The position numbers were made by a program, and so were the translations under genes. Below the pieces are notes generated by a model. The model did not search any database. It saw nothing but the letters and a program-made list of their open reading frames with translations, and was not told where the DNA came from. DNA of 64,000 nt from IMG/VR virus record IMGVR_UViG_3300049001_000044, positions 1 to 64,000 of that record; one strand, given 5' to 3'. Of this stretch, positions 46,070 through 63,027 are shown in pieces (the first letter of the stretch is position 1; each line of letters begins with the position of its first letter).

Positions 46070-47680
46070 TTAGAACTCTTGGATCAGCTGCGGAGCCGAG
46101 CTGTCGAAGCCAACAATGTCCAGCATACCCGGATCTTTCGGATCCGCGATGGTGAAGTTGGTGACCGAAGTACCGCACACGATCAGCTTGGACTGACGGT
46201 TGTACTGCTGACGGTAGTCGCGCAGTGCCTGGACGGGCTGCTGACGACCAGCGTAGGTTTCGTTGTCAGTGATGACCACGAACTTGTCTACACCCGACAT
46301 CTTGTGCTCGATTGCGTGGCGCATCGGCAGGGAGCAGTCGGTGGAACCCCAGCTAAAGCGCTGCATGACAGCGAGGACTTGGTCCAGGCGCATGGACGGG
46401 GAAATCTTCAGTTCACCCATGCGGGAGTTGAAGCCACCGATCCAGTAGTTGGGCTCACGCTTTGCAACTGCCAAAGCCATGACTGCTGCAACTTCAGCAG
46501 CGGTGAGGTTAGGTGCGCCGGTGACGCGAGATCCCCACATCGAACCCGAGCAGTCAACGCCGATCAGGTGGCCCTGGCCGGTGGTGTCGACGTAGTTGAA
46601 CGATTCGTAGAACGCGTCGTTCAGTGCATCGAGGATTCGCTGGTCCGGACGCCAGCTCAGGCTACCTTTGTCGCCATGACCTTGCTTGTACTGGTTGAAG
46701 GCGTTGAGGATCGTGATCGGGTGAACACGTCCACGCTTGATCGCTTCCACGTCCGTCAGCTTGGCGATTGCCAGCTTCGAACCTTCCGACAGATTGCCGA
46801 TCACACCGACGTTGGTCAGTTGACCCAGCTTTCGGATCAGAGCGGTCATGCCCATGTTCGGAAGCAGAGCATTCCAAACGTCGACATCACGCTGCAGTTC
46901 GGTTGGGATCATCTCCCACGACAGATCACGGTTGGACTCGATCAGCTGGATGGCCAGCTTCTTGTCCGCGCCGGCACGCTTCAGGGTTTCGAAGTCGACC
47001 AGCAGTTGTGGTACTTGCGCACCAGCTGCGATCGCCTCTGCACCTTTCGTTGCGTAGCGGAACATTGCGTTCTGCAGCTCGTTCTGCGGCTTAGCGTGAG
47101 CCAGACGGAGAACGTCGCGGTGAGACCAGCCATCACGCTGTTGGTACTTCAGCATCTGCAGGGCCAGCTTGTCTTCACGGCGGTTGGTGTACCACGCAGA
47201 GATACCGCGCTTTGCAGCAGCGTTCCACTTGCCCATCGAGTCGATGGCGGAGACGAACTGGAACAGCATGGTGCCAGTACGAGCGACTTTCGGCAGAGCT
47301 GCGTAAGCAGCCGAGACAGTGTCAGGGTTGCCGTTGATAGCGGCGAGAGCCAGAGCGAAGACCGCAGGGTCATTCTTCGGCGCACGGCCTGCTTCGGAGA
47401 TTTCGACGATGCGATTGACGGTACGGATACCATCGTTCTTGATGCAGTCGATGACGTTCTTAGCCGCCTTAATGGTCAGCTCTTTCTTGCCCGCGTAGTA
47501 CGAAGGCGTGTCAGAACCCAGGATCAGAAAGCGATCGAGGTAGCCCCACATGTCCAGTTGGAACGTGAAGCCGCCTGCGCTGTTACGCACCATCTCACTC
47601 TCACGACCAGGGATCGGAGCAGTTTGTGGGGTTGCGCGGGTGTTAACCTTCGGTGCGAGGATATCAGTGTAAGACGACAT
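46070..47680 (-). CDS. rsr: Ro60 / TROVE-domain RNA-binding protein (Rsr ortholog)
   Basis: RNSAGGFTF...RFLILGS...YYA; KYQQRDGWSHRDVLRLAH; LPNMGMTALIRKLG; vWA MIDAS VDCSGSM; ITDNET; LDIVGFDS. Confidence 0.95.
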   Translation of the reverse strand: MSSYTDILAPKVNTRATPQTAPIPGRESEMVRNSAGGFTFQLDMWGYLDRFLILGSDTPSYYAGKKELTIKAAKNVIDCIKNDGIRTVNRIVEISEAGRAPKNDPAVFALALAAINGNPDTVSAAYAALPKVARTGTMLFQFVSAIDSMGKWNAAAKRGISAWYTNRREDKLALQMLKYQQRDGWSHRDVLRLAHAKPQNELQNAMFRYATKGAEAIAAGAQVPQLLVDFETLKRAGADKKLAIQLIESNRDLSWEMIPTELQRDVDVWNALLPNMGMTALIRKLGQLTNVGVIGNLSEGSKLAIAKLTDVEAIKRGRVHPITILNAFNQYKQGHGDKGSLSWRPDQRILDALNDAFYESFNYVDTTGQGHLIGVDCSGSMWGSRVTGAPNLTAAEVAAVMALAVAKREPNYWIGGFNSRMGELKISPSMRLDQVLAVMQRFSWGSTDCSLPMRHAIEHKMSGVDKFVVITDNETYAGRQQPVQALRDYRQQYNRQSKLIVCGTSVTNFTIADPKDPGMLDIVGFDSSAPQLIQEF

Positions 47681-47736
47681 TAGTAATTCTCCTTAAAAAG
47701 CGGCTGCGTCCGCAGCAAATGGCAACGAAAAAGAAA

Positions 47737-48089
47737 TTCAGTGAGGCTAGCAAAGGGTGTTGTCGGAGATTTCAGCTGCTCTTCATCTCTTTCGAGTCTT
47801 GCGAAGGGCAACCTACACTTCAAAATTCCGTTAAGATAGAGTTGAAGTTCTCACGGCCTGTTTCATGGCTTATTCAGTTTGACGACGCTGACAAACGCTC
47901 ATGGATAACGTTCACATGAGAGGACGACCACCGATTGGGCGAGGACAACGATGATAGCCTCCGACCATGCCTAACTTAGTGAGCTCGAACGGTGATAAGC
48001 ACCTTGCTCCTAAGGTTTACACAATCGAAACCGCTTACAGTTCACTTGGCTATTTTAGGTAACCAACAACTACGGCTAGCTCGACTGAA
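47737..48089 (-). ncRNA. ~350-nt Y-RNA-like element directly upstream of Ro60
   Basis: Ends pair as GCUAG[C]CGU-A-GUUGUUGG-UUACCU with CCGACAAC-ACCCU-UUG-CUAGC, extended by UUCAGU-GAG/CUC-ACUGAA; TACAAT -10 just upstream; U-rich 3' flank. Confidence 0.75.
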
Positions 48090-48177
48090 ATTAAATTGTA
48101 CAACAGGGGGAGTATTGAAAAAACTGCAACCAGAACAGTTGCAGTTTCAGAAGTAGAAAAGTATATATTGGTGGGCG

Positions 48178-48750
48178 TTAACCTGCCGCGTTCTCTTCTT
48201 TGACTTCCTCGTCTTCTGGGAACTCCAGACGGAAGAGGATGCCAGGCGGGATCAGCATGTGACCATCAGGAATTGCGTAGGTGGCCATCTGCTTGGGGTT
48301 GATCGTGTCTTCAAAGTAGGCAGTGACCAAGTTGCCTTGAGGACTGCGTACTTTGATCCATTCGTAAATCTCCGCATCGTAGTAATGGCCGATGGGAGCA
48401 GGTGGGAGTTCCTCGATAGTGAACTCCATCTGCATTGCGGGATTTTCAGTTGGCTCTGGCTCTTCGACTTTCGCCATCCTCTTCTGTTGCTGTGCGATGA
48501 CGTTTTGAGCATCATCGTACATGAGTTGCGGATTGAAGCCGTAGACGACCCAAACAATTGCAACCTCTAGCAACTTGAAGAGGAAGAAGACACCAAGAGC
48601 TGACACCACGGCGAGGATAATCCATTCAAAAGCGGTACCATGCGGAAGCCAGTTGTACACTCCGAAAGGAACACCGAAAAGAGTGAGAAGGGCTGCAAGT
48701 CTACGCAGTGCAACTACCTTCTTCAGGCGTGGAGTCAGTTCATATTCCAT
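48178..48750 (-). CDS. Membrane protein
   Basis: Two N-terminal hydrophobic helices. Confidence 0.8.
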   Translation of the reverse strand: MEYELTPRLKKVVALRRLAALLTLFGVPFGVYNWLPHGTAFEWIILAVVSALGVFFLFKLLEVAIVWVVYGFNPQLMYDDAQNVIAQQQKRMAKVEEPEPTENPAMQMEFTIEELPPAPIGHYYDAEIYEWIKVRSPQGNLVTAYFEDTINPKQMATYAIPDGHMLIPPGILFRLEFPEDEEVKEENAAG

Positions 48751-49322
48751 TAAGTGAGATCCTTTTTGATGCGGCTGTTGTCAGGGAGGAAGTCGATTAA
48801 GAAGTCCATCTGGTCTTTCAAGATGTTTCTGTTTGCCAAGATCAAGTGCTCTGCACGGGTAGGAACGTATGGCACGTAAAGCAGTTCCATCCGAGCTTCC
48901 TTCAAGGACTTGTCGTCCTTGTACTGGTTGCAACGACGGCAGCAGGTCACCACGTTCATCCAAGTATCCTTACCACCCTTCGATCTTGGAACGATGTGGT
49001 CACGGGTAAGGTTCGTATCGGTGAAGACACCACCGCAGTAACCACACAGATGGCGGTCACGACGGAACAACTCGCGGTTGCTCAGTGATGGTGGACGATT
49101 GCGACGCTTACCGGCTGCTCCCTTCAGAGCAATGATCGACGAAGTCTTGATGATCGACGTACGACCCGTGACCGCATTTTCGCCACCACGGAATTCGAAT
49201 TCAACTTCACCAAGTGACCATGCAATCAGATCCTTCGCCTGGTAGACGACGGCATCTTGCCATGTGATCCATTTGTTTGGTTGACCTTGTGAGTCAAGCT
49301 GCAGAATTTGTGGGTAGCTCAT
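48750..49322 (-). CDS. HNH endonuclease
   Basis: LFRRDRHLCGYCG...TRDHIVPRSKGGKDTWMNVVTCCRRCN. Confidence 0.92.
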   Translation of the reverse strand: MSYPQILQLDSQGQPNKWITWQDAVVYQAKDLIAWSLGEVEFEFRGGENAVTGRTSIIKTSSIIALKGAAGKRRNRPPSLSNRELFRRDRHLCGYCGGVFTDTNLTRDHIVPRSKGGKDTWMNVVTCCRRCNQYKDDKSLKEARMELLYVPYVPTRAEHLILANRNILKDQMDFLIDFLPDNSRIKKDLT

Positions 49323-49596: not shown

Positions 49597-50283
49597 ATGA
49601 AGAAAATCATCCTAGGCTCTGCCGTCTTTCTATTTACTGCCTCATCGTTCGCAAAAAGTGGATGTGAGGACTTCACTTACAACGGGGTGTTTCCAACCAC
49701 TAGGGACAAGGTCACCATCCTTTGCAAGAACGGCTTCGCTGTTGGTTACTCCACCGAGAAGAAGACTCTGTTGTGGGTAGTAGAGAGGATTGACCCTAAC
49801 GCCAAGTACACCATCAAGCATCGCCCATCCTTCCACAAAGACGACGCGCTTCCTCATGACGTTCAATCCAGTAATCAGGACTTCGTCGGTACAGGTTACG
49901 ACAAGGGCCACATGGTTCCATTTGAGGACATGTCCTACAGCAGGGAGTCCGCTTACGATAGCATGAGCCTAACCAATATCGTGCCACAGAACTTTGCGAA
50001 CAATAGAGGCGGATGGAAATCGCTGGAAATGTACGCGCGAAAAAGTGCGAGCTATGGAGTTGTGTACGTGGTGAGTGGCCCTATCTTCGAAGGCAAAATG
50101 GACTATCTCAACAAGCGCGTCCCTATCCCTACCTCGCTCTTTAAGGTCATCATCAATCCCAAGACAAAAAAGACCGAGGCATGGGTCCTACCTAATACGC
50201 CAATCTCCAGCTACGAGGTAGACCACTTCAAAACTACCCCTCAAGCAATTGGGAAGCTAGGAGTGCAAATCACCACCCCATGA
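49597..50283 (+). CDS. Secreted DNA/RNA non-specific endonuclease (NucA family)
   Basis: Signal peptide; GYDKGHM, TNIVPQ...NNRGGW; late promoter GTAAATA upstream. Confidence 0.9.
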   Translation: MKKIILGSAVFLFTASSFAKSGCEDFTYNGVFPTTRDKVTILCKNGFAVGYSTEKKTLLWVVERIDPNAKYTIKHRPSFHKDDALPHDVQSSNQDFVGTGYDKGHMVPFEDMSYSRESAYDSMSLTNIVPQNFANNRGGWKSLEMYARKSASYGVVYVVSGPIFEGKMDYLNKRVPIPTSLFKVIINPKTKKTEAWVLPNTPISSYEVDHFKTTPQAIGKLGVQITTP

Positions 50284-50322
50284 GTTGACGCCCGTCATAG
50301 TTGACAGGTTTCAATGCTGCAG

Positions 50323-50351
50323 AAAAAGGGCTCCACGAGGGAGCCCTTTTT
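50323..50351. terminator. Bidirectional intrinsic terminator
   Basis: AAAAAGGGCTCC-ACGA-GGGAGCCCTTTTT. Confidence 0.75.
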
Positions 50352-50368
50352 CTTTCGAGTTACAGAGG

Positions 50369-51184
50369 TTACGGTGTTACCGGCAATGCACGCTTGTGGA
50401 TTGTCTTCGAGAACTGGTCGATGATGCGCTGCTCTGAGGTCGAGCTGATCTCCTTGCCCTCTAGGTAATCGTCGATCTCGTCGTATGTCACCCCATAGGC
50501 CACTTCGTCTGGCTTGCCTGGGTCCAGATTCTCTAGGTCAGCAGTTGGGGTCTTGTTCACCAACTTATCTGGTGCGCCCAGCGCTTTTCCAATGGCCTTC
50601 ACCTGTCGTTTCGTCAGGCCAGCCAGAGGCATGATGTCAGCAAACCCATCACCGCCTTTCGTGAAGAAGCCCATCACTGCTTCGGCCGCATGGTCAGTAC
50701 CAATCACCAAGCCACCAGTTGCCCCAGCGATTGCATACTGCATGATCATCCGCTGTCGAGCCTTGATATTGCCCATCACGAAGTCTTCATGCTCAATGCT
50801 GTTGAACTTGACTTCGTTGTGGACTTCAAACAGGACAGCTTCGCTTGCACGTCCGATGTTGCAGGTCAACGTGATATCTGGCTGGATGAAGTTGAGAGCT
50901 GCCTGCGCATCCGCTTCGTCACGTTGAGTATGGTAAGGCAGACGGACAGCGATGAACTCTGCATCGTAGCCTTCCGACTTTAGTTTATAGATGGCAAGTT
51001 GTGCGAGCTTACCAGCAGTTGTCGAGTCGACACCACCAGAAATGCCCAGCGTGTAGGTGCGCTGGCCAGATTTCCGCAGATAGTCGGCGAGGAAGTCAAC
51101 ACGACGGTTGATCTCTTGGTCAACATCAATAACTGGTTTAACGTTCAACTCACGAATGATTGCGTCTTGGACTACTTTAAACAT
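50369..51184 (-). CDS. nadE: NH3-dependent NAD+ synthetase
   Basis: LGISGGVDST, GNIKARQRM, IGTDHAAE, GFFTKGGDG, KTPTADLE. Confidence 0.95.
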   Translation of the reverse strand: MFKVVQDAIIRELNVKPVIDVDQEINRRVDFLADYLRKSGQRTYTLGISGGVDSTTAGKLAQLAIYKLKSEGYDAEFIAVRLPYHTQRDEADAQAALNFIQPDITLTCNIGRASEAVLFEVHNEVKFNSIEHEDFVMGNIKARQRMIMQYAIAGATGGLVIGTDHAAEAVMGFFTKGGDGFADIMPLAGLTKRQVKAIGKALGAPDKLVNKTPTADLENLDPGKPDEVAYGVTYDEIDDYLEGKEISSTSEQRIIDQFSKTIHKRALPVTP

Positions 51185-51470
51185 TCTCTTGTTCCTTTTC
51201 AATTTGATTGGCGCATTGACGCATCAGATAGATGGCGTCGACAAAATCCCATTTGTTCCTGGGTAGTCTTGGGAGGGTGAAGCGAACACTCAATGCCCAG
51301 CGGTCGAAGTCAGCGATTTTGGCACCGACTTGGAACTCGCCGTACATGTTCACTCTCCACCTTCGCCCTTTACCAACGAGGTAGAACCAACGGGACTGGC
51401 GCTGTCCACTGCTCTCAGGCTTGAGGCCCGCCTTCTTGCACCAATCTGCCCATTGCTTAGGTAGCTTCAT
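51177..51470 (-). CDS. Hypothetical protein
   Basis: Overlap-coupled to nadE. Confidence 0.7.
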   Translation of the reverse strand: MKLPKQWADWCKKAGLKPESSGQRQSRWFYLVGKGRRWRVNMYGEFQVGAKIADFDRWALSVRFTLPRLPRNKWDFVDAIYLMRQCANQIEKEQENV

Positions 51471-51633
51471 CTCGAATCAGCTCTTTCAGAAGATCCATCC
51501 CACTGTCGTAGTCGCCTTCGTTGAATTCGATGACTGCAGCGCGGATGATGTTGGTGGTTTGGGTGAGGGACATCGTCAGCAACTTCACCTGCTCTTCCAG
51601 TTGCTGGATTTTGAGTTGGTCACCGATGCTCAT
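51457..51633 (-). CDS. Small hypothetical protein (58 aa)
   Basis: MSIGDQLKIQQLEEQVKLL...; fills the gap and overlaps both neighbours. Confidence 0.55.
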   Translation of the reverse strand: MSIGDQLKIQQLEEQVKLLTMSLTQTTNIIRAAVIEFNEGDYDSGMDLLKELIRDEAT

Positions 51634-51800
51634 CGCTTTAGCTTCTCGTATGCTGCCATCGCTGCTTGGGCTTCTTCAACGATGTTCTTAGTCAGGGACG
51701 CCAGGCCCCATCCACCACTTCGTGAGATGTTGCCAGTGAGAGAGGCAGCAATGAACTGCGCAATCTTCTCATTGTACTCGCTAATTGGAATGTGGCTCAC
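51630..51800 (-). CDS. Small hypothetical protein (56 aa)
   Basis: GTG start overlapping the upstream stop. Confidence 0.5.
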   Translation of the reverse strand: MSHIPISEYNEKIAQFIAASLTGNISRSGGWGLASLTKNIVEEAQAAMAAYEKLKR

Positions 51801-52342
51801 GAAGTAAGTTCCTTCAGAATGCGGATGGTGCGTTCACCATCGTTCGTGTCGTGTAAGATGCCGATACCACCCGCAGCAATCCATTCCTGGATATTGTCGT
51901 GGCGGTCATCGATGAGGATGTCACCCTTGTTCTTCACGTGCTTCCACTTGTCACGAGAGTAGGGACCAATCACGACAGGAATTTCGATGTGTGGGAAGCG
52001 GTCTGCCATCCAGTCGATCTTGTCTTTCTCTGCTGAGGGGACAGACGCACGACGAGGAATTGCAGTCAGCATCCTACGTGCTTTAGCTGGGGTCGCCATC
52101 ACCGCCTGCAGCAAGTCTTCTGCATACGGGGTGGTTGGCAGTTCGAAATACAGGCGATCCCACTTTGACAGGAACGACCACATTTCTGCGTCAGCGCCTG
52201 GACCGGCTTGGTGGGAGAAGGTTCGACCCATGTGAATGAAGACGAACGCGTCGAAGTCGGCAACGACGCCGTCCATATCGACGTTGATCTCATTTACGTT
52301 GGGATCAAACGTGGTGATTACTTGGGTTAGTAGATGTTCCAT
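51797..52342 (-). CDS. 5'(3')-deoxyribonucleotidase-like HAD phosphatase
   Basis: VDMDGVVADF, LTA, K, ILIDD. Confidence 0.9.
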   Translation of the reverse strand: MEHLLTQVITTFDPNVNEINVDMDGVVADFDAFVFIHMGRTFSHQAGPGADAEMWSFLSKWDRLYFELPTTPYAEDLLQAVMATPAKARRMLTAIPRRASVPSAEKDKIDWMADRFPHIEIPVVIGPYSRDKWKHVKNKGDILIDDRHDNIQEWIAAGGIGILHDTNDGERTIRILKELTS

Positions 52343-52443
52343 AGGCTCCTCTTGTTATGAGTTATTGTACGTCGCCATCACTCAATAAAAATCTGCGACC
52401 AGATCCGGAGCAAAAGAAAGCCCGACGAATCGGGCTTGTGTCT

Positions 52444-52519
52444 TGGTGCTGTAGAAGGGAATCGAACCCATGACCTCTTCCTTACCAAGAAAGTGCTCTA
52501 CCGACTGAGCTACTACAGC
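52444..52519 (-). tRNA. tRNA-Thr(GGT)
   Basis: Canonical cloverleaf, CCA. Confidence 0.95.
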
Positions 52520-52525
52520 ATGAGA

Positions 52526-52906
52526 TTATTTATGGGCTTCCATCCGTTCCCGGATATCAGCAAACGCTACCTCGAATTCATGCTCCGCTTTGAAGTATTC
52601 ATCTGCATAGTCCGCATATCCCACGGCGATATTGCTCGTACTACTTAATACACCAAATCGGTTCTTCACGATGCGAGCGAGTTGGCAGAGACGGTCGAGG
52701 TCCTCCACCGTCACCTTTGTCAGGACACGCGGTGGTTGCTCATTGCTCAAGAAGGCGTGCTCGTATTTCCAAGTAGCACGCGGCCACGCCTTCGCCTGGT
52801 TAGGATGCAGGATCTTGGGACCGAACTCCACGTGCCCATCCTCGATGTGGTTGTGCTCGAAGACGCCCTTGTCGTTCTTGCGAGTCCAAATGGTAATGGG
52901 CGTCAT
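52526..52906 (-). CDS. Hypothetical protein
   Basis: Overlap-coupled. Confidence 0.75.
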   Translation of the reverse strand: MTPITIWTRKNDKGVFEHNHIEDGHVEFGPKILHPNQAKAWPRATWKYEHAFLSNEQPPRVLTKVTVEDLDRLCQLARIVKNRFGVLSSTSNIAVGYADYADEYFKAEHEFEVAFADIRERMEAHK

Positions 52907-53637
52907 TCCTCCACCTCTTGAAAATCGGAGAGGTCCACATCTACTGACTTCTCTTTGTAGCCCAGCACCTTCGCGATTTGGATGAAGGCCTGCTTCACCA
53001 GCTCTTTGTGCGCCTCACGGCCACCATTCATGAACTGCTCAGCAGTCATCCAAACCACAGCACCGGTTTCGAAGTGCGGTTGGTTGAAGTCGAACTCATC
53101 CTTCACCTCGACAGCATAAAGAGCGAAGGTGTATTCCTTCTCGTCTTGAATCGTACCCTTCAGCACGTTGTAGACGGATTGTTCCTGGTATGTGGTGTTG
53201 TCCAGCTTCAGACCCAGCTCTTCTTCACCCTCACGAATTGCTGCGTGCTTTGAGGATTTGTCGGTAGGATCAACATACCCCTTGCTGATTTGCGGAAGAG
53301 GACCACCATATTTCGGGTCAGACGAAATCATGAACATCATACGCAGCTCCCTGCCATCGTGACGGTAAGGGATGATGCCTGCCTTCTCGACAGGTGGATG
53401 CCAAGTCCAGCAGCCACAGTACTTGCAACCCACTGGGTCCCAGTTCTCGTATCCATCGAAGTGACGGTAGTATGCGTGACCACAGTCGCATTTCGCATCG
53501 TCAGGGAAGTCAGGATTCATGCGCAGCTCGGTGCGCTCTACCATCACCTTCGTGCGAAGATATGGACCCGTGGTGTCAGCATCCGGCTCGGACGACAACA
53601 CCTTGTCTTGGTTTATGCAGTTGAAAATTCTTGCCAT
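52903..53637 (-). CDS. NUDIX hydrolase with N-terminal Cys/His zinc-binding domain
   Basis: CDCGHAYYRHF...CKYCGC, then KAGIIPY...KGYVD...AAIREGEEELGL. Confidence 0.88.
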   Translation of the reverse strand: MARIFNCINQDKVLSSEPDADTTGPYLRTKVMVERTELRMNPDFPDDAKCDCGHAYYRHFDGYENWDPVGCKYCGCWTWHPPVEKAGIIPYRHDGRELRMMFMISSDPKYGGPLPQISKGYVDPTDKSSKHAAIREGEEELGLKLDNTTYQEQSVYNVLKGTIQDEKEYTFALYAVEVKDEFDFNQPHFETGAVVWMTAEQFMNGGREAHKELVKQAFIQIAKVLGYKEKSVDVDLSDFQEVEE

Positions 53638-53687
53638 CGTTCCTCCTTTGTACTTGTTATTGTACAACGATGGCGATCGTGTTGAAA

Positions 53688-54608
53688 CTAAGTCCTGGTC
53701 TCCAACACTTTGGGATGTAAGCTGATTACGTTATCGACGTATTTCACTTGTCTTGTAAATCGATATCGATGCAAGATGTCGAATACCCTCTTGCTGGGGT
53801 ATTTGCCAAACTCAAGTCTGTCTCTTTGCGTTACGAGCTCAGACTTCTCATCGTATATTTCCTTCACTCGTTCGAAGCCGGTCATCTTGAACTTTTGTGG
53901 GATGACGTCGAACCCCGCTCTAGAGTACAAGTCGCATTTATTGGCGTACCCAGTCGAGGAACATCGTGCCGTCCTGAAGAATCTACGGAATGAACCGACT
54001 AACTCAGGATCATGTATGAAGAAGAATGGGATGATACTTCTTTGGGTATTTGTCGCGTAGCGAAGTAAACCCAAAATCGTGTAATTGACATTTGGACCTT
54101 CTGAGTAACAGTTACCGCTAAAGATGACGGTACCCTCAGTTACCAGCTCACTCATCTTCATGTGCGTGCAGATTTGCGGACTAGTACAGCTATGCGTTAA
54201 GACGTAGGACTCAAGCTCCCGTTCTATGAAGTCAATGATCTTGAAGTCTTTGAACTCAACCGCCAATCCATTCATGTCTACGAAAGTCTTCAGCGTTTCC
54301 AAGTCTTCAACATTGAGTACCTCACCGTCATCAGTCACATACTGCACCGACATTAGCTTGAATGGAACACCTGACTTCATCCAAGCGCAAACCATCGCTT
54401 GACTATCGACCCCTCCTGATACCATTAGAGTGAATGGTGCGGGATACTTATCAGCGATCCTTCTTACAGAATTAACGGCAGCCGTCAGTGGTGGTAGATC
54501 ATTCTCATCTACCACACTAAAGTCCATCACGTATGGGATAGATCGACTGGGCGTCTGAGATAACTTAAGGCCCCATCCCTTTTTCACCCAATCCAAAATC
54601 ACCCCCAT
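53688..54608 (-). CDS. PP-loop (adenine-nucleotide alpha-hydrolase) protein, start uncertain
   Basis: LMVSGGVDSQ PP-loop. Confidence 0.75.
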   Translation of the reverse strand: MGVILDWVKKGWGLKLSQTPSRSIPYVMDFSVVDENDLPPLTAAVNSVRRIADKYPAPFTLMVSGGVDSQAMVCAWMKSGVPFKLMSVQYVTDDGEVLNVEDLETLKTFVDMNGLAVEFKDFKIIDFIERELESYVLTHSCTSPQICTHMKMSELVTEGTVIFSGNCYSEGPNVNYTILGLLRYATNTQRSIIPFFFIHDPELVGSFRRFFRTARCSSTGYANKCDLYSRAGFDVIPQKFKMTGFERVKEIYDEKSELVTQRDRLEFGKYPSKRVFDILHRYRFTRQVKYVDNVISLHPKVLETRT

Positions 54609-54612
54609 ATCG

Positions 54613-56208
54613 TTACATGCACGCAACACCGGTGCAATAGCAGTCCATCTGTTTTGCGCTACCACAGTTGTGGCAAGCGGTACAGCCGTTCGTTGCGCAT
54701 GTTGTGACATTACAAGTACCGCCGGTCGCGTAAGGCGTGATCTTCAACTGTGGATCAACAGTTGGGTCGCTCTCGTCTAGCGTATCAGCAACAACCCACA
54801 TTCTAACTTGGTAGGGGACTTCTCCGCCTTCACGAAGGGAGAGAGTGAAATTGATGTCGAAGTATTTCCAAGTCGAACCATCTGTGATGTCGATCTTACC
54901 AAGTAGCAGGCCGTTGTCAAATGTCATGCCTTCAGGCAAGCCGTCGCAAGTTGCACTTGACACCGTTAGTCTGTTGAAGAGGTCGAAGCCCCACTCTTGC
55001 CCACTCTTGACCTTTAGCTCAGCCAGGGCGCCAACACCGACATCATATGGCTTGGTCTTGAATGTAGTGACTAGGTTAACGGACGAGGAGTATTTTGGAT
55101 CATCCAGATGAATCAAATTTCTGCGGTAGAAGCCCACTGTGCCAACGAAGGTTTGCACAAACGTATCTTCACTGATCGATTTGATAGCAATTTGCCCGTC
55201 GCTAGTAACAGCAGTGGCGAGATTATACGCAGTTGCTGCAGTATGGATCGCAGCTGCGATAGATGTTCCGGATACCAATCCATATCCACCACCAACCAGC
55301 GCGACGTAGATGTCTTCACCTGGTGCCCAGCCATCTAGCTGTCCACCATTCGTAGCGCCAGTAGTCAAGCTGGTCGCTGACGAGTAATTGGAGAAATCTG
55401 ATGGCATGAAATCCTGGCTATAAGAGCCGATCGTGGTCACCATATCCATGCCAGCAGGGGTCACATCGCCGATCTCAACTCCACTGTTACCTGCAGCGGC
55501 GACAGCGTAGACGCCGGCTTCGATAAGCTTGGCGATTTTGGATTCGATGAATGTGTTCTTAGCAATACCCCAGCTCATGTTCACGACAGAGGCGGTCTTT
55601 CCATTTGCCACAAAGTCAGAGATGATGGCATCGAATGCGTCAAGCAAATCACTCTGCAGAGTCTCGACGGAATTGTCGAACACCTTAACCACCTTGACAC
55701 TTGCAGACGTCATGCCGCATGTCTTACCAGCGATGACGCTTGCGAGAGATGTGCCGTGACCAGTGGTGTCAGTGAAGTCACTCGTGAACGAGTGCATGGT
55801 TTGAATCTTCGCATCCGCAAATTCAGGGTGTGTCAAGTCAATACCACTGTCCATGATATAGATGGTGACATTATTACCCAAGATAGGGTAGGTCTCTACA
55901 TCGGTGGAAAAGTCTGGGGTCATGATACTAGCGACCTTCCACCAATCCTTCGAGTCGGTATTTGAGAACTGTCCGTATTGGAAATCTGTACCTAGATCGA
56001 AACTTACACCCATCAGATTGATTGGGTTCGATTCGTTCTTAATAGCTGTCTCCACGATGTCAGTGACAGGCGGCTCAATGTCGGTGTCTACCAGATAAAC
56101 TTCTTCATAGTTCTGGTACTGCTTCACCACATTGCAGTTGTTTGCCTGGAGGTAAGCTTGGATATCTGCAAGGGTAGCGTCTTGCTTAAAGTCGACTAGG
56201 AATTTCAT
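54613..56208 (-). CDS. Subtilisin-family (S8) protease with Cys-rich C-terminal tail
   Basis: IYIMDSGID, GHGT, AAGNSG, SGTSIAA; C-terminal segment with 8 Cys. Confidence 0.92.
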   Translation of the reverse strand: MKFLVDFKQDATLADIQAYLQANNCNVVKQYQNYEEVYLVDTDIEPPVTDIVETAIKNESNPINLMGVSFDLGTDFQYGQFSNTDSKDWWKVASIMTPDFSTDVETYPILGNNVTIYIMDSGIDLTHPEFADAKIQTMHSFTSDFTDTTGHGTSLASVIAGKTCGMTSASVKVVKVFDNSVETLQSDLLDAFDAIISDFVANGKTASVVNMSWGIAKNTFIESKIAKLIEAGVYAVAAAGNSGVEIGDVTPAGMDMVTTIGSYSQDFMPSDFSNYSSATSLTTGATNGGQLDGWAPGEDIYVALVGGGYGLVSGTSIAAAIHTAATAYNLATAVTSDGQIAIKSISEDTFVQTFVGTVGFYRRNLIHLDDPKYSSSVNLVTTFKTKPYDVGVGALAELKVKSGQEWGFDLFNRLTVSSATCDGLPEGMTFDNGLLLGKIDITDGSTWKYFDINFTLSLREGGEVPYQVRMWVVADTLDESDPTVDPQLKITPYATGGTCNVTTCATNGCTACHNCGSAKQMDCYCTGVACM

Positions 56209-56225
56209 GGTGTCCTTATTTTGGT

Positions 56226-56453
56226 TTACCACTTGTTAAGTGGGCACTCAACGTTCAATAGCTTTGTCTTTGCCGTCATAAAGCACCCGCACTCCTTGCA
56301 AGTCTTCGTGAGCTTGATAAGTGAGGGGCACTCGACACAAATCTCGATGCGCTTCTTCGCGACATCTGTTGGTGCAAGCTGGCCTTGGACGCGTTCAGCA
56401 ACTTCTTCAGCAACTTCCTGCACTCTAGCCTTTAGTTTGTCTGCGAATGACAT
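56226..56453 (-). CDS. Small Cys-rich protein (DUF6171-like)
   Basis: RIEICVEC...CKECGCFMTAKT...CPLNKW. Confidence 0.85.
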   Translation of the reverse strand: MSFADKLKARVQEVAEEVAERVQGQLAPTDVAKKRIEICVECPSLIKLTKTCKECGCFMTAKTKLLNVECPLNKW

Positions 56454-56481
56454 GTTAAGCCTTCTATGGTTGATGGGATAT

Positions 56482-56949
56482 TTATTGGGCTAGCTTTCGA
56501 ATCTTCTCCGCACACGCGGACACGATGTGACGTTGGGAACGTCGACCCTTCTTGTTGAATTCCGCTTCAGTGAACCAAACAACTTCCTTGGTCTCATAGT
56601 GCGGTTTGCCGAAGTCGCGAACGTCATCGACCCGGCAGATCATGACAGTAAAAGGATACTTGGCGTCTAGCCCTTCCAACTCGCCCGTCCATCCCGTGGT
56701 TAGGGTACCATCCACGATGTTCGAACGACGAAGTCCAAGTTCTTCTTCGGCTTCCCTAACACCTGCAACTTCCTCAGTCTCTCCTGGGTCAATGCCACCC
56801 TTAGCAATCATGGGGTCTGGACCACCATAGGCCGCGTCGGACGAGATCATGAAAGCCATGCGAGGTTCGCCATTGGCTTCCAATACGTAGGGAATGCATC
56901 CTGCTTTCCCACGCTTCTTGGGTGCTTCGAAAAGTTGATGTAGTTTCAT
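56482..56949 (-). CDS. NUDIX hydrolase with capsid-targeting-like N-terminus
   Basis: MKLHQLFEA; KGGIDPGETEEVAGVREAEEELGL; late promoter at 56979. Confidence 0.9.
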   Translation of the reverse strand: MKLHQLFEAPKKRGKAGCIPYVLEANGEPRMAFMISSDAAYGGPDPMIAKGGIDPGETEEVAGVREAEEELGLRRSNIVDGTLTTGWTGELEGLDAKYPFTVMICRVDDVRDFGKPHYETKEVVWFTEAEFNKKGRRSQRHIVSACAEKIRKLAQ

Positions 56950-57003
56950 GTTGGGATGAGTGTAAGTGATAGTGAAGCTATTTATCCAGCGCATAGCTCA
57001 GGA

Positions 57004-58598: not shown

Positions 58599-58728
58599 TG
58601 GCGCCGATGGATAGGATTCGAACCTACCGACCACCCTCGAGATAGGAGATAACCATCCACGGGCGGTTGCAATACAACAAAGATTGCGGACGATGTTTTA
58701 GGTGCTCTAACCACTGAGCTACATCGGC
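58599..58728 (-). ncRNA. tRNA-Y RNA chimera: tRNA acceptor, D and T arms with a permuted Y module replacing the anticodon arm
   Basis: GCCGAUG/CAUCGGC-G-CCA; insert AUCGUCCGC-AAUCU-UUG-UUGU-AUU-GCAA[C]CGC-CC-GUGGAUGGU-UAUCU. Confidence 0.75.
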
Positions 58729-59199: not shown

Positions 59200-59272
59200 G
59201 CCAACAAAAGAGTGGTAGACGGGATTGGGTTTGAGTAAAAGTCAAAGATAACCATCGTACCTGTCGGTTGGC
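59200..59272 (-). ncRNA. Minimal 73-nt Y RNA
   Basis: GCCAA[C]CGA-CA-GGUA-C-GAUGG-UUAUCU, pyrimidine-rich loop, then CCGUC-UACC-ACUCUU-UUG-UUGGC. Confidence 0.78.
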
Positions 59273-62897: not shown

Positions 62898-63027
62898 TGG
62901 TCGGGAATGATGGAATCGAACCATGGTTTCTTCTGTCCAACCGAAGAGTCCTAACACAAGTCGGTGTGTTACTAACTTGCTGAAAGTATCTTCGGCCAGG
63001 AGCGTTCTGCCATTGAACTAATTCCCG
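62898..63027 (-). tRNA. tRNA-Pro(TGG) with a ~56-nt hairpin insertion in the anticodon loop
   Basis: CGGGAAU/AUUCCCG-A-CCA (C1-G72, A73); insert closed by CCGAAGA/UCUUCGG, followed by U-UGG-AC. Confidence 0.75.

What the first reader, a model, noticed from the sequence alone, without database searches (positions are those of the whole stretch)
47737..48089. Very large Y-RNA-like element in the Ro60 leader
The ends form about 25 bp of interrupted helix with the Ro site, enclosing ~270 nt with several hairpins (GGUUU/AAACC, GGUG/CACC, CUCAUG/CAUGAG, ACUUCAA/UUGAAGU, CUC-GAAA-GAG). At ~350 nt it is about three times typical Y RNA length. It starts just after a TACAAT -10 and ends ~55 nt before the Ro60 start, so it could be an effector scaffold or an autoregulatory leader.
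Basis: partly seen in the sequence, partly recalled or inferred. Interest (0 to 1): 0.85.

Follow-up and report, generated by a model that had tools for sequence, protein, structure and literature searches.

The report
Giant Y RNA beside phage Ro60
A jumbo phage carries, just upstream of its Ro60 gene, a conserved ~350-nt structured RNA whose paired ends form a Ro60 docking site like that of Y RNAs but whose body is two to three times larger than any described Y RNA, which enlarges the known range of Ro60 partner RNAs.

Summary
On the minus strand, 48089..47737, the two ends form a 23-bp interrupted helix around ~270 nt of hairpins. The element starts 5 nt after a TACAAT box and ends 56 nt before the Ro60 ATG (47680).

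It is not chance. About 28 distinct relatives, all uncultured jumbo-phage contigs, carry a 223-378-nt module at the same place. Their stem sequences differ but always pair: cognate arm duplex -34.9 vs non-cognate -16.1 kcal/mol, and the cognate arm is best in 20 of 21 loci.

The core is invariant:
- 5' strand: outer helix, C-C-G, inner helix ending in GG, then UUAYC.
- 3' strand: YGAAAUCU, CCGA inner helix, UUU(U/C)G, outer helix.

This gives a C:G pair, a bulged C and a G.U pair, the geometry of the human Y RNA Ro60 site. The same 5' core occurs three times upstream of Ro in mycobacteriophage Catera, including its YrlA.

The element matches no Rfam family and has no tRNA-like domain. The same core also builds a small Y RNA (59271..59201) and a tRNA-shaped, circularly permuted Y RNA (58728..58599) inside the window's tRNA array.

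Best reading: a new, enlarged class of Y RNA that docks Ro60 by its stem and offers a multi-hairpin effector domain. Expression, Ro60 binding and function are untested.

The parts
48118..48144 (-). Intrinsic-terminator-like hairpin (CUGCAAC-loop-GUUGCAG followed by U6) that ends the upstream 190-aa gene. It implies the element starts a new transcription unit.
   Evidence: Read directly from the sequence. The consensus scan did not list it, probably because stem extension consumes part of the U run.
48095..48100 (-). -10-like box TACAAT, 5 nt before the first paired base of the element.
   Evidence: Every related locus has a TATAAT/TATAAA/TAGAAT-type box shortly upstream of its first Y module. 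No full sigma-70 consensus was found, so this is pattern-level evidence only.
47737..48089 (-). Large Y-type RNA, 353 nt: a closing stem carrying the Ro60 site plus a ~270-nt multi-hairpin apical domain.
   Evidence: Fold. Homologous modules of 223-378 nt at the same position in about 28 relatives. Covariation. No coding signal.
48075..48089 (-). Outer helix, 5' strand (UUCAGUCGAGCUAGC). Its last C is the first C of the C-C-G motif (48075..48073).
   Evidence: Across 21 loci, outer-helix positions are canonical in 17-21 of 21, with 1-9 pair types per position (the innermost C:G is invariant).
48063..48070 (-). Inner helix, 5' strand (GUUGUUGG), followed by the conserved UUACC (48062..48058).
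   Evidence: The GG:CC, U.G/U-A and U-A pairs are kept in 21 of 21. The U.G pairs fix the transcribed strand as the Ro60 strand.
47759..47775 (-). Conserved 3'-side junction CUGAAAUCU (47775..47767), then the inner helix 3' strand CCGACAAC (47766..47759).
47737..47758 (-). 3' internal-loop strand ACCCUUU (47758..47752) and outer helix 3' strand GCUAGCCUCACUGAA (47751..47737). The G at 47751 pairs with the first C of C-C-G.
47812..47848 (-). Hairpin ACUUCAA-loop-UUGAAGU followed by GUAGG. This is the most widely conserved apical element of the family (consensus ACC-stem-loop-stem-GGU-GUAGG).
   Evidence: four pairs, one of them with 11 of 22 sequences changed on both sides.. It is 100% identical in the 91%-related L002. 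GUAGG occurs 29 times against 5.9 expected.
47775..47812 (-). Hairpin capped by CUC-GAAA-GAG (47796..47787).
   Evidence: In L002 the loop is GCAA (GNRA kept) and the lower stem changes from CCUUC/GAAG to AGUUUU/AAAAUU, which is compensatory.
47701..47719 (-). Leader hairpin UUU-GCUGC-GGAC-GCAGC-CG, 6 nt before the Shine-Dalgarno AAGGAG (47694..47689). Its flanks copy the Ro-site strands (UUUG ... C-CG), with the outer helix capped by a loop.
   Evidence: Present in 19 loci; 4 of 6 pairs show compensatory changes. It stays next to the Ro60 start where an ORF separates the Y module from Ro60 (L008, L009). It occurs once in the window. Most loci lack a following U run, so it is not a terminator.
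46070..47680 (-). Ro60 (TROVE ring plus vWA domain), 536 aa.
   Evidence: Pfam. PDB sequence matches: D. radiodurans Rsr 9e-104, human RO60 3e-101, Xenopus Ro60 1e-95.
59201..59271 (-). Small Y RNA (~71 nt) with the same core, directly after tRNA-Thr in the tRNA array.
   Evidence: A covariance model built only from small modules next to Ro60 in seven other phages gives this as its best hit: 34.9 bits, E 8e-7 over 289 kb.
58599..58728 (-). tRNA-shaped RNA with a 7-bp acceptor stem, D arm, T arm and encoded CCA. The anticodon-arm position holds a circularly permuted Y core: inner helix 3' strand, UUUG, capped hairpin, C-CG, inner helix 5' strand, GG-UUAUC.
   Evidence: Five members (window, L047, L056, L063, L071) covary in the acceptor stem, inner helix and capped helix. 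ARAGORN and Rfam do not call it a tRNA.

Best explanation
The element is the gene for a very large member of the Y RNA class, the non-coding partner RNAs of the Ro60 ring protein.

Proposed mechanism:
1. It is transcribed from a promoter just upstream (TACAAT at 48100..48095) in the same unit as Ro60.
2. Its 5' and 3' ends pair into a 23-bp interrupted stem. The stem displays the Ro60 docking site: a C:G pair, a bulged C, a G.U pair, a short inner helix ending in GG, and the UUAYC / GAAAUCU junction.
3. Ro60 binds this stem. Binding would define and protect the ends of a ~350-nt RNA released from the precursor.
4. The ~270-nt multi-hairpin apical domain takes the place of the effector-binding module of ordinary Y RNAs. 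That module is a loop in animals, a tRNA-like domain in YrlA, and the PNPase-binding part in Deinococcus Yrn1. Here it would tether Ro60 to, or gate it against, another factor. The most likely factor is a host 3'-5' exoribonuclease or another RNA-handling protein.
5. A separate conserved hairpin next to the Ro60 ribosome-binding site copies the Ro-site flanks. It may let surplus Ro60 repress its own translation.

Shown here: the structure, its conservation and covariation, the strand, the shared core with known Y RNAs, and the linkage to Ro60.
Inferred: expression as a discrete RNA, Ro60 binding, the effector role, and autoregulation.
For: - Ro60 identity.
- Terminal stem.
- Same-position modules of 223-378 nt in about 28 distinct jumbo-phage contigs.
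- Arm duplex energy is -34.9 kcal/mol for cognate pairs and -16.1 (sd 5.3) for non-cognate pairs; the cognate arm is best in 20 of 21 loci.
- Outer-helix positions are canonical in 17-21 of 21 with up to 9 pair types. The C:G pair is invariant. U.G pairs fix the strand.
- RNAalifold finds compensatory changes in the inner helix and in apical hairpins: 10 of 12 pairs and 21 of 33 pairs.
- GAAA changes to GCAA, with a compensating stem change, in the 91%-related contig.
- The C:G pair, cytidine bulge and adjacent G.U are what RO60 needs in human RNY5, which also has UUAU at positions 22-25 (PMC8973356). In the phage family UUAY starts 13-14 nt after the first C.
- The 5' core occurs three times upstream of Ro in Catera, once around the Rfam YrlA hit.
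- The core motif was found upstream of Ro60 in 24 of 25 Ro60-containing loci, against 2 chance hits in 55 Ro60-lacking loci fetched through the neighbouring HNH gene.
- The same core builds a small Y RNA (CM E 8e-7) and tRNA-shaped Y RNAs.
- Precedent: Y RNAs lie upstream of rsr and are processed from a common precursor in M. smegmatis, and are co-transcribed with a tRNA in D. radiodurans (PMC4201824). Thermus phage phiLo Yrl1/Yrl2 lie upstream of its Ro60, bind it, and form a complex with host PNPase (PMC12135203).
Against: - There are no expression or binding data, and no cultured relative (best isolate Ro60 is 42% identical).
- No Rfam family matches, including Y_RNA and YrlA, at E up to 10. 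Relatives give no match either.
- My small-Y covariance model does not reach Catera's modules. The link to published Y RNAs therefore rests on a shared motif and geometry, not on a significant model score.
- No terminator or mapped processing site separates the element from the Ro60 mRNA, so a purely cis role is not excluded.
- The interior of the window's own copy is divergent from the main group. Its only close relative is truncated, so most of its internal hairpins are predictions from one sequence.
- The single-sequence fold z-score is only -2.2.
Confidence: 0.66

Rival explanations
1. It is only a cis-acting 5' leader of the Ro60 mRNA. It would be a structured untranslated region that controls Ro60 translation or mRNA stability, for example by binding Ro60 or another protein or by sensing temperature. 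It would have no life as a separate RNA.
For: The element ends 56 nt before the ATG, and no U-rich terminator is conserved between it and Ro60. A conserved hairpin abuts the Shine-Dalgarno sequence.
Against: - The module can be separated from the Ro60 start. A 108-115-aa ORF (L008, L009) or a 247-aa ORF (L012) lies between them, while the leader hairpin stays with Ro60 in L008 and L009.
- The same core forms free-standing genes in tRNA arrays about 11 kb away.
- Pairing of the extreme 5' and 3' ends is the signature of stable Ro60-bound RNAs. Characterised Y RNAs are likewise cut out of precursors that include rsr or tRNAs.
Confidence: 0.14
2. It is a Ro60-binding RNA whose large body is not an effector tether but a multivalent platform or sponge. 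Several internal hairpins would each bind a further Ro60 (or another abundant protein) to build higher-order particles.
For: CGAA, the motif taken as the bacterial Ro60 contact (PMC4201824) and present in the hairpins of phiLo Yrl1/Yrl2 that give different Ro60 stoichiometries (PMC12135203), is enriched in the interiors of the family: 48 against 26.2 expected, z 4.7, mostly in loops. The number of hairpins varies between loci.
Against: The window's own copy has a single CGAA, and it belongs to a GNRA tetraloop that is GCAA in the nearest relative. L009 and L011 have none. The sequences are related, so the z-score overstates independence. The group-A interiors look like one ordered fold with distinct conserved hairpins rather than repeated units.
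Confidence: 0.12
3. It is a structured phage RNA of another kind (a ribozyme, a riboswitch, or a scaffold for an unrelated protein). Its position next to Ro60 would be lineage-specific gene order, and its resemblance to the Ro site would be coincidental.
For: No Rfam Y-family match. Gene order is conserved in this lineage for genes with no evident link to Ro60: the HNH gene upstream is syntenic here, but 55 of 80 of its homologues lie in loci without Ro60.
Against: The core motif tracks Ro60, not the HNH gene: 24 of 25 loci against 2 of 55. The motif reproduces the C:G pair, bulged C and G.U geometry and the spacing to UUAY seen in human RNY5. It recurs in Catera's YrlA region. No other Rfam family matches either.
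Confidence: 0.06
4. There is no function. It is a chance fold in a spacer or a decayed gene.
For: The single-sequence z-score is only -2.2. The mechanical ORFs in the region have no homologues.
Against: Covariation across about 28 loci whose outer-stem sequences have a median identity of only 27%. Invariant core motifs. No ORF is conserved across the loci.
Confidence: 0.02

Closest known systems
Bacterial and mycobacteriophage YrlA/YrlB Y RNAs (Chen et al. 2014, PMC4201824; Rfam RF02553)
   Same: Encoded just upstream of Ro60 on the same strand, often two per locus. The 5' and 3' ends pair. The 5' core CCG-N(10-11)-GG-UUAYC and the pairing of the first C with a 3' G are present in all three Catera modules. 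The design is modular: a Ro60 site plus a second domain.
   Different: - Size: 353 nt (family 223-378) against 88-161 nt in Catera and about 147 nt for M. smegmatis YrlA.
- There is no tRNA-like T/D domain: no YrlA hit, whereas the same search finds Catera's.
- The 3' strand of the site is conserved (UUUUG), as in Deinococcus and metazoa. In YrlA only the 5' strand is recognisable.
- The GNCGAA motif is reduced to NCCGN.
Metazoan Y RNAs (hY1, hY3-hY5; Rfam RF00019) and D. radiodurans Yrn1/Yrn2
   Same: Terminal stem with a C:G pair, a bulged cytidine and an adjacent G.U pair, followed by a second helix ending in G's and then UUAU(C). The spacing from the paired C to UUAU is 13-14 nt here and 14 nt in RNY5. 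Both strands of the site are conserved. The phage Ro60 is about as close to the human and Xenopus proteins as to Deinococcus Rsr.
   Different: Three times longer. The apical part is a set of hairpins with GNRA and UUCG loops, not a pyrimidine-rich loop. It is made as part of a bacterial-type operon, not by Pol III. There is no Rfam Y_RNA match at E up to 10. The human sequences other than the positions quoted in PMC8973356 are from my memory.
Thermus phage phiLo Yrl1/Yrl2 with phiRo60 (PMC12135203)
   Same: Phage-encoded Y-like RNAs upstream of the phage Ro60. They have stem-bulge-stem organisation and were shown to bind the phage Ro60 and to form ternary complexes with host PNPase. This is the best experimental model for how the element may work.
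   Different: phiLo Ro60 is a distant relative (E 3e-10 against 1e-95 to 1e-104 for canonical Ro60s). Yrl1 and Yrl2 were drawn with one or two CGAA hairpins, whereas here the interior holds 5-8 hairpins. No sequence comparison was possible because their sequences were not at hand.
Large ornate phage-associated RNAs (GOLLD, ROOL)
   Same: They are large structured non-coding RNAs found in phage genomes, often near tRNA genes (from my own knowledge).
   Different: There is no Rfam match to either. The present RNA has a recognisable protein-docking stem and strict linkage to Ro60.

Membership tests
Y RNA (Ro60-associated non-coding RNA, general definition) | Encoded close to the Ro60 gene on the same strand (the criterion used for bacteria and phages: within 4 kb, same strand) | tested here: met
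   The element ends 56 nt upstream of the Ro60 ATG on the same strand. The same holds in about 28 relatives.
Y RNA (Ro60-associated non-coding RNA, general definition) | Long stem formed by pairing of the 5' and 3' ends | tested here: met
   23 bp in the MFE fold. Cognate arms pair far better than non-cognate arms. Covariation at 11 of 12 outer-helix positions.
Y RNA (Ro60-associated non-coding RNA, general definition) | Conserved Ro60 site in that stem: a C:G pair, a bulged C and a G.U pair within a CCG motif on the 5' strand | tested here: met
   C:G in 21 of 21 loci. C-C-G and UUU(U/C)G are conserved. The requirement in RNY5 is quoted in PMC8973356. This is a match of sequence and geometry, not a binding test.
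Y RNA (Ro60-associated non-coding RNA, general definition) | Size of roughly 70-150 nt | tested here: not met
   353 nt here; family 223-378 nt. Catera modules are 88-161 nt by the same script. M. smegmatis YrlA is about 147 nt.
Y RNA (Ro60-associated non-coding RNA, general definition) | Bound by Ro60 in vivo and dependent on Ro60 for accumulation | not testable with these tools
   This needs immunoprecipitation or gel shift, and there is no cultured phage or host.
Rfam Y_RNA (RF00019) | Covariance-model match | tested here: not met
   No hit at E up to 10 in 47500-48400, nor for the small Y region.
YrlA (Rfam RF02553) | tRNA-like effector domain (T arm, D arm, capped acceptor stem) | tested here: not met
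   No YrlA or tRNA hit in the element or in seven relatives in the permissive mode. The same mode finds Catera's YrlA at 36 bits, E 7.6e-5.
YrlA (Rfam RF02553) | GNCGAAN0-1G motif near the 5' end | tested here: inconclusive
   The window has GCCGUAG. The family consensus is RNCCGN, so the C-G of the motif is kept and the AA is not. Catera's modules, which fit GNCGAA, share the rest of the 5' core.
Cis-regulatory leader or riboswitch | Fixed position relative to the regulated start codon, with an expression platform (terminator or SD-sequestering helix) | tested here: not met
   ORFs are inserted between the module and Ro60 in L008, L009 and L012. There is no conserved terminator or anti-SD pairing. 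The separate leader hairpin, not the large element, keeps a fixed distance to the SD.

The most novel reading that the evidence does not exclude
These Ro60-encoding jumbo phages may carry a whole toolkit of partner RNAs built on one Ro60-docking core:
- a minimal Y RNA;
- a 220-380-nt 'giant' Y RNA with an ordered multi-hairpin domain that assembles a so far unknown Ro60 machine;
- tRNA-shaped, circularly permuted Y RNAs with a genomically encoded CCA end. tRNA enzymes could process these, and possibly charge them, and they would bring Ro60 to the tRNA or translation apparatus or decoy host anti-tRNA defences.

In addition, Ro60 may measure the supply of these RNAs through a Ro-site mimic in its own mRNA leader.
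Probability: 0.25. Interest if true: 0.85.

Novelty: new variant of a known kind. Interest (0 to 1): 0.64.

Why it matters
Y RNAs are understood as small two-module adaptors, with one module docking Ro60 and the other choosing the effector. What the second module binds is unknown for most bacterial and all phage Y RNAs.

A conserved family whose second module is about 270 nt of ordered hairpins gives a much larger and more specific handle for finding the partner, by pull-down or cryo-EM. It also shows that the Ro60 docking core of animals (both strands, bulged C) exists in phages.

The companion RNAs in the same genome use the same core in three architectures. One of them is a tRNA with a CCA end, the mirror image of YrlA. 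Together they make the long-standing question of why bacterial Y RNAs mimic tRNA directly testable in one system.

The leader hairpin offers a simple hypothesis for Ro60/Y RNA stoichiometry control that has not been described.

Tried and rejected
- Rfam, gathering and permissive modes, on the window and on relatives: nothing but tRNAs.
- DNA similarity to 50,697 phage records: none.
- Exact-pattern search for closer relatives of the window's interior: only the window's own contig and the already known truncated contig, whose two ends are inverted copies.
- MAFFT plus RNAalifold on full-length modules. The outer helix is not recovered because its sequence is not conserved and MAFFT puts it out of register. 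I replaced this with anchored pair tables and a cognate versus non-cognate duplex test in Python. The heuristic mis-anchored L003 and L019, so its counts are slightly conservative.
- Covariance model of the whole large module: not attempted, because it is over the size limit for calibration.
- The small-Y model R1 does not hit Catera, so there is no formal score linking the two families.
- HNH nuclease as the effector. It is strongly syntenic (alignment A3), but 55 of 80 homologous loci lack Ro60, so I dropped it as a specific partner. Its AlphaFold model was too poor to use (pLDDT 47.6), and no fold search was run.
- The upstream 190-aa protein has no Pfam, PHROG or PDB match.
- Coding potential of the element: none.
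- Anti-SD pairing by the conserved UCUCC: rejected, because CUCC is not conserved across loci.
- The CGAA-hairpin idea fits many relatives but not the window's copy.
- Two reviews (PMC10870794, PMC6542706) were not available.

Full report
**What is there.** The window is part of IMG/VR contig UViG_3300049001_000044, a 343-kb jumbo-phage genome. The gene at 46070..47680 on the minus strand encodes a full-length Ro60. Pfam gives TROVE 1e-34 and vWA_Ro60 5.6e-55. PDB sequence matches are D. radiodurans Rsr 9e-104, human RO60 3e-101 and Xenopus Ro60 1e-95. The finding lies on the same strand, immediately upstream.

Reading 5' to 3' on the minus strand:
- a terminator-like hairpin with a U6 tail that closes the preceding gene (48144..48118);
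- TACAAT (48100..48095);
- the element (48089..47737);
- a 17-nt spacer;
- a short hairpin (47719..47701);
- AAGGAG (47694..47689);
- the ATG (47680).

**The observation.** As RNA, the 353 nt fold to -106.5 kcal/mol. The z-score is -2.2, and 2 of 100 shuffles do as well. Taken alone this is only suggestive. The mechanical ORFs in the region have no Pfam or PHROG match. No similar DNA exists in 50,697 phage records.

**Relatives.** I fetched loci through Ro60 from IMG/VR and from metagenomes, and later through the neighbouring HNH gene. Ro60 in these loci is 54-91% identical to the window's. Nearly all have an ORF-free gap of 300-800 nt before Ro60.

In each gap a module with the same ends is found. 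The 5' strand is an outer helix, C-C-G, an inner helix ending in UUGG, then UUAYC. The 3' strand is YGAAAUCU, CCGA-inner helix, a few nt, UUU(U/C)G, and the outer helix. Module lengths are 223-378 nt in 22 aligned members plus six more. The great length is therefore a property of the family, not an oddity of this phage.

**More than chance.**
- The 22 nt before C-C-G are unrelated between loci (median identity 27%), yet each pairs with its own 3' arm. Cognate duplexes average -34.9 kcal/mol, against -16.1 (sd 5.3) for all non-cognate combinations. The cognate arm is the best of 21 in 20 loci; the exception is a near-identical relative.
- In tables anchored on the invariant C:G pair, 17-21 of 21 sequences are canonical at each of 12 outer-helix positions, with up to nine pair types. 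The first five inner-helix pairs are kept in 21 of 21.
- U.G pairs (14 of 21 at one inner position) would be A.C on the other strand, so the functional strand is the Ro60 strand.
- RNAalifold on a MAFFT alignment recovers the inner helix and two apical hairpins, with compensatory changes in 10 of 12 pairs. On the better-aligned subgroup it gives 33 pairs, 21 with compensatory changes.
- The 91%-related contig L002 is truncated and covers only the 3' third. It shows a GAAA-to-GCAA tetraloop exchange and a compensating stem replacement.

**Why this is a Ro60 site.** The first C of C-C-G pairs with the G of UUUG, the second C has no partner, and the G faces a U. Saturation mutagenesis of human RNY5 showed that the G:C pair at position 8, the cytidine bulge and the adjacent wobble are required for RO60 binding. 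The same paper places UUAU at positions 22-25 (PMC8973356). In the phage family UUAY begins 13-14 nt after the paired C.

Chen et al. 2014 describe the bacterial version as GNCGAAN0-1G. They note that Deinococcus, like metazoa, keeps both strands of the helix, whereas YrlA keeps only the 5' strand (PMC4201824). As a positive control I scanned mycobacteriophage Catera. The permissive Rfam search finds its YrlA upstream of Ro (36 bits, E 7.6e-5). My motif finds three modules there, of 95, 161 and 88 nt. Each has GG-C-CG-A-N-CGG-UUAYC and the same C:G pairing, and the 161-nt one encloses the YrlA hit. The core therefore belongs to the published Y RNA docking module.

The core also tracks Ro60. 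Among 80 loci fetched through the HNH gene, the 25 with Ro60 carry it just upstream (24 of 25). The 55 without Ro60 give two stray matches.

**What it is not.** No Rfam family, including Y_RNA and YrlA, matches the element at E up to 10. None matches seven relatives in the permissive mode. There is no tRNA-like domain. The size criterion of Y RNAs fails by a factor of two to three. I therefore file it as a new variant of the Y RNA kind, not as a member of YrlA or of Rfam Y_RNA.

**The apical domain.** In the main subgroup it holds at least five conserved hairpins. These include GC-AA-GUU-GAAA-GAC-AA-GC, a stem with a (G/A)YCGAAYA loop, and ACC-stem-GGU followed by GUAGG. GUAGG is strongly over-represented (29 against 5.9 expected) and CGAA moderately (48 against 26). 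In several loci GUAGG can pair with a CCUAC-type stretch near the 5' side, with covariation in L019. I saw this by eye only.

The window's copy keeps the GUAGG hairpin and the GNRA-capped hairpin but is otherwise divergent. It has a single CGAA. A platform of repeated CGAA hairpins, as suggested by phiLo Yrl1/Yrl2 (PMC12135203), does not fit this copy well.

**How it probably works.** By analogy with characterised systems, the stem docks on Ro60 and the second module tethers or gates it. The analogies are PNPase in Deinococcus, an unknown factor at the tRNA elbow for YrlA (bioRxiv 10.1101/312249), and host PNPase for phage phiLo.

Y RNAs upstream of rsr that are cut from a common precursor are known in M. 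smegmatis. Co-transcription with a tRNA is known in D. radiodurans. The absence of a terminator before Ro60 therefore fits a processed, Ro60-protected RNA.

I considered the strongly syntenic HNH protein (52-70% identical in nearly all loci) as the effector. Most of its homologues sit in phages without Ro60, so I do not propose it.

**The leader hairpin.** Nineteen loci have UU(U/C)-GCUGY-loop-RCAGC-CG at 6-14 nt before the Shine-Dalgarno sequence. Compensatory changes occur in four of six pairs. The hairpin stays with the Ro60 start when an ORF is inserted after the Y module (L008, L009). Most loci have no U run after it, so it is not a terminator. It occurs once in the window.

Its flanks are the two strands of the Ro site, with the outer helix closed by a loop. 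The same capped arrangement occurs, followed by the inner helix and UUAUC, in the tRNA-shaped RNAs described below. I read it as a candidate operator for Ro60 autoregulation. This is an inference, which I put at about 0.4.

**Companion RNAs.** The core motif recurs twice more on the minus strand of the window, inside the array of 25 tRNA genes.
- At 59271..59201, directly after tRNA-Thr, lies a ~71-nt small Y RNA. A covariance model built only from the small modules next to Ro60 in seven other phages gives it as the top hit (34.9 bits, E 8e-7 over 289 kb). The model also finds further copies in the tRNA arrays of other jumbo phages. In most relatives this small module sits just upstream of the large one. 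In the window it has moved to the tRNA array.
- At 58728..58599 lies a tRNA-shaped RNA with a 7-bp acceptor stem, D and T arms and an encoded CCA. Its anticodon arm is replaced by a circularly permuted Y core. Five members (window, L047, L056, L063, L071) covary in the acceptor stem, the inner helix and the capped helix. YrlA is a tRNA-like domain with a closed acceptor stem and open Ro stem. This RNA is the reverse topology. It recalls the RNase P-cleaved, CCA-tailed form of M. smegmatis YrlA.

**Limits.**
- Nothing here shows expression, end positions, Ro60 binding or function.
- The promoter is a -10-like box only.
- The interior of the window's copy rests on one sequence.
- The link to published Y RNAs is by motif and geometry, not by a significant model score.
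- Statistics on related sequences overstate independence.

Noticed in passing
window 59201-59271 (-): Small Y RNA (~71 nt) directly after tRNA-Thr in the tRNA array. It has the same docking core as the large element. In most relatives the equivalent small module lies just upstream of the large one, next to Ro60.
   Followed up: yes
window 58599-58728 (-); also L047:5293-5420, L056:3866-3992, L063:4212-4336, L071:~2503-2630: tRNA-shaped RNA with acceptor stem, D arm, T arm and encoded CCA. Its anticodon-arm position holds a circularly permuted Y core with a capped Ro-site helix. Five members covary. ARAGORN and Rfam do not call it a tRNA. It appears to be the reverse topology of YrlA.
   Followed up: partly
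window 47701-47719 (-): Conserved hairpin UUU-GCUGC...GCAGC-CG, 6 nt before the Ro60 Shine-Dalgarno sequence, present in 19 loci with covariation. Its flanks mimic the two strands of the Ro site. Candidate Ro60 autoregulatory operator.
   Followed up: partly
window 62901-63027 (-): A 127-nt tRNA-like gene (Rfam tRNA 36 bits; not called by ARAGORN) with an insertion of about 55 nt in the anticodon region. The insertion begins with GGCCGAAG, a match to the YrlA-type GNCGAAN0-1G motif. It could be an intron-containing tRNA or another Ro60-related tRNA mimic.
   Followed up: no
window 48750-49322 (-): A 190-aa HNH-domain protein with intact catalytic motif, 52-70% identical and syntenic upstream of Ro60 in nearly all relatives. 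The family is widespread (229 viral loci), and 55 of the 80 best lack Ro60 nearby, so the synteny is probably lineage gene order. The AlphaFold model was poor (pLDDT 47.6).
   Followed up: partly
L008:3590-3937 and L009:3562-3888; L012:3247-3990: In two relatives a conserved 108-115-aa ORF of unknown function, and in another a 247-aa ORF, lie between the large Y module and Ro60. This shows that the module and the Ro60 start can be separated.
   Followed up: no
L064 (IMGVR_UViG_3300012212_000692, 8764 bp; same contig as L002): The only close relative of the window (Ro60 91% identical) is a contig whose two ends are inverted copies of each other. This is probably an assembly artefact, and it cuts off the 5' two thirds of its large Y module.
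   Followed up: no
window 49597-57000: The neighbourhood between Ro60 and the tRNA array encodes a DNA/RNA non-specific endonuclease, NAD synthase, a 5'-nucleotidase, two NUDIX proteins and a subtilase-like protein (Pfam). No RNA ligase, RtcB or PNPase was seen among the ORFs searched in the window.
   Followed up: partly
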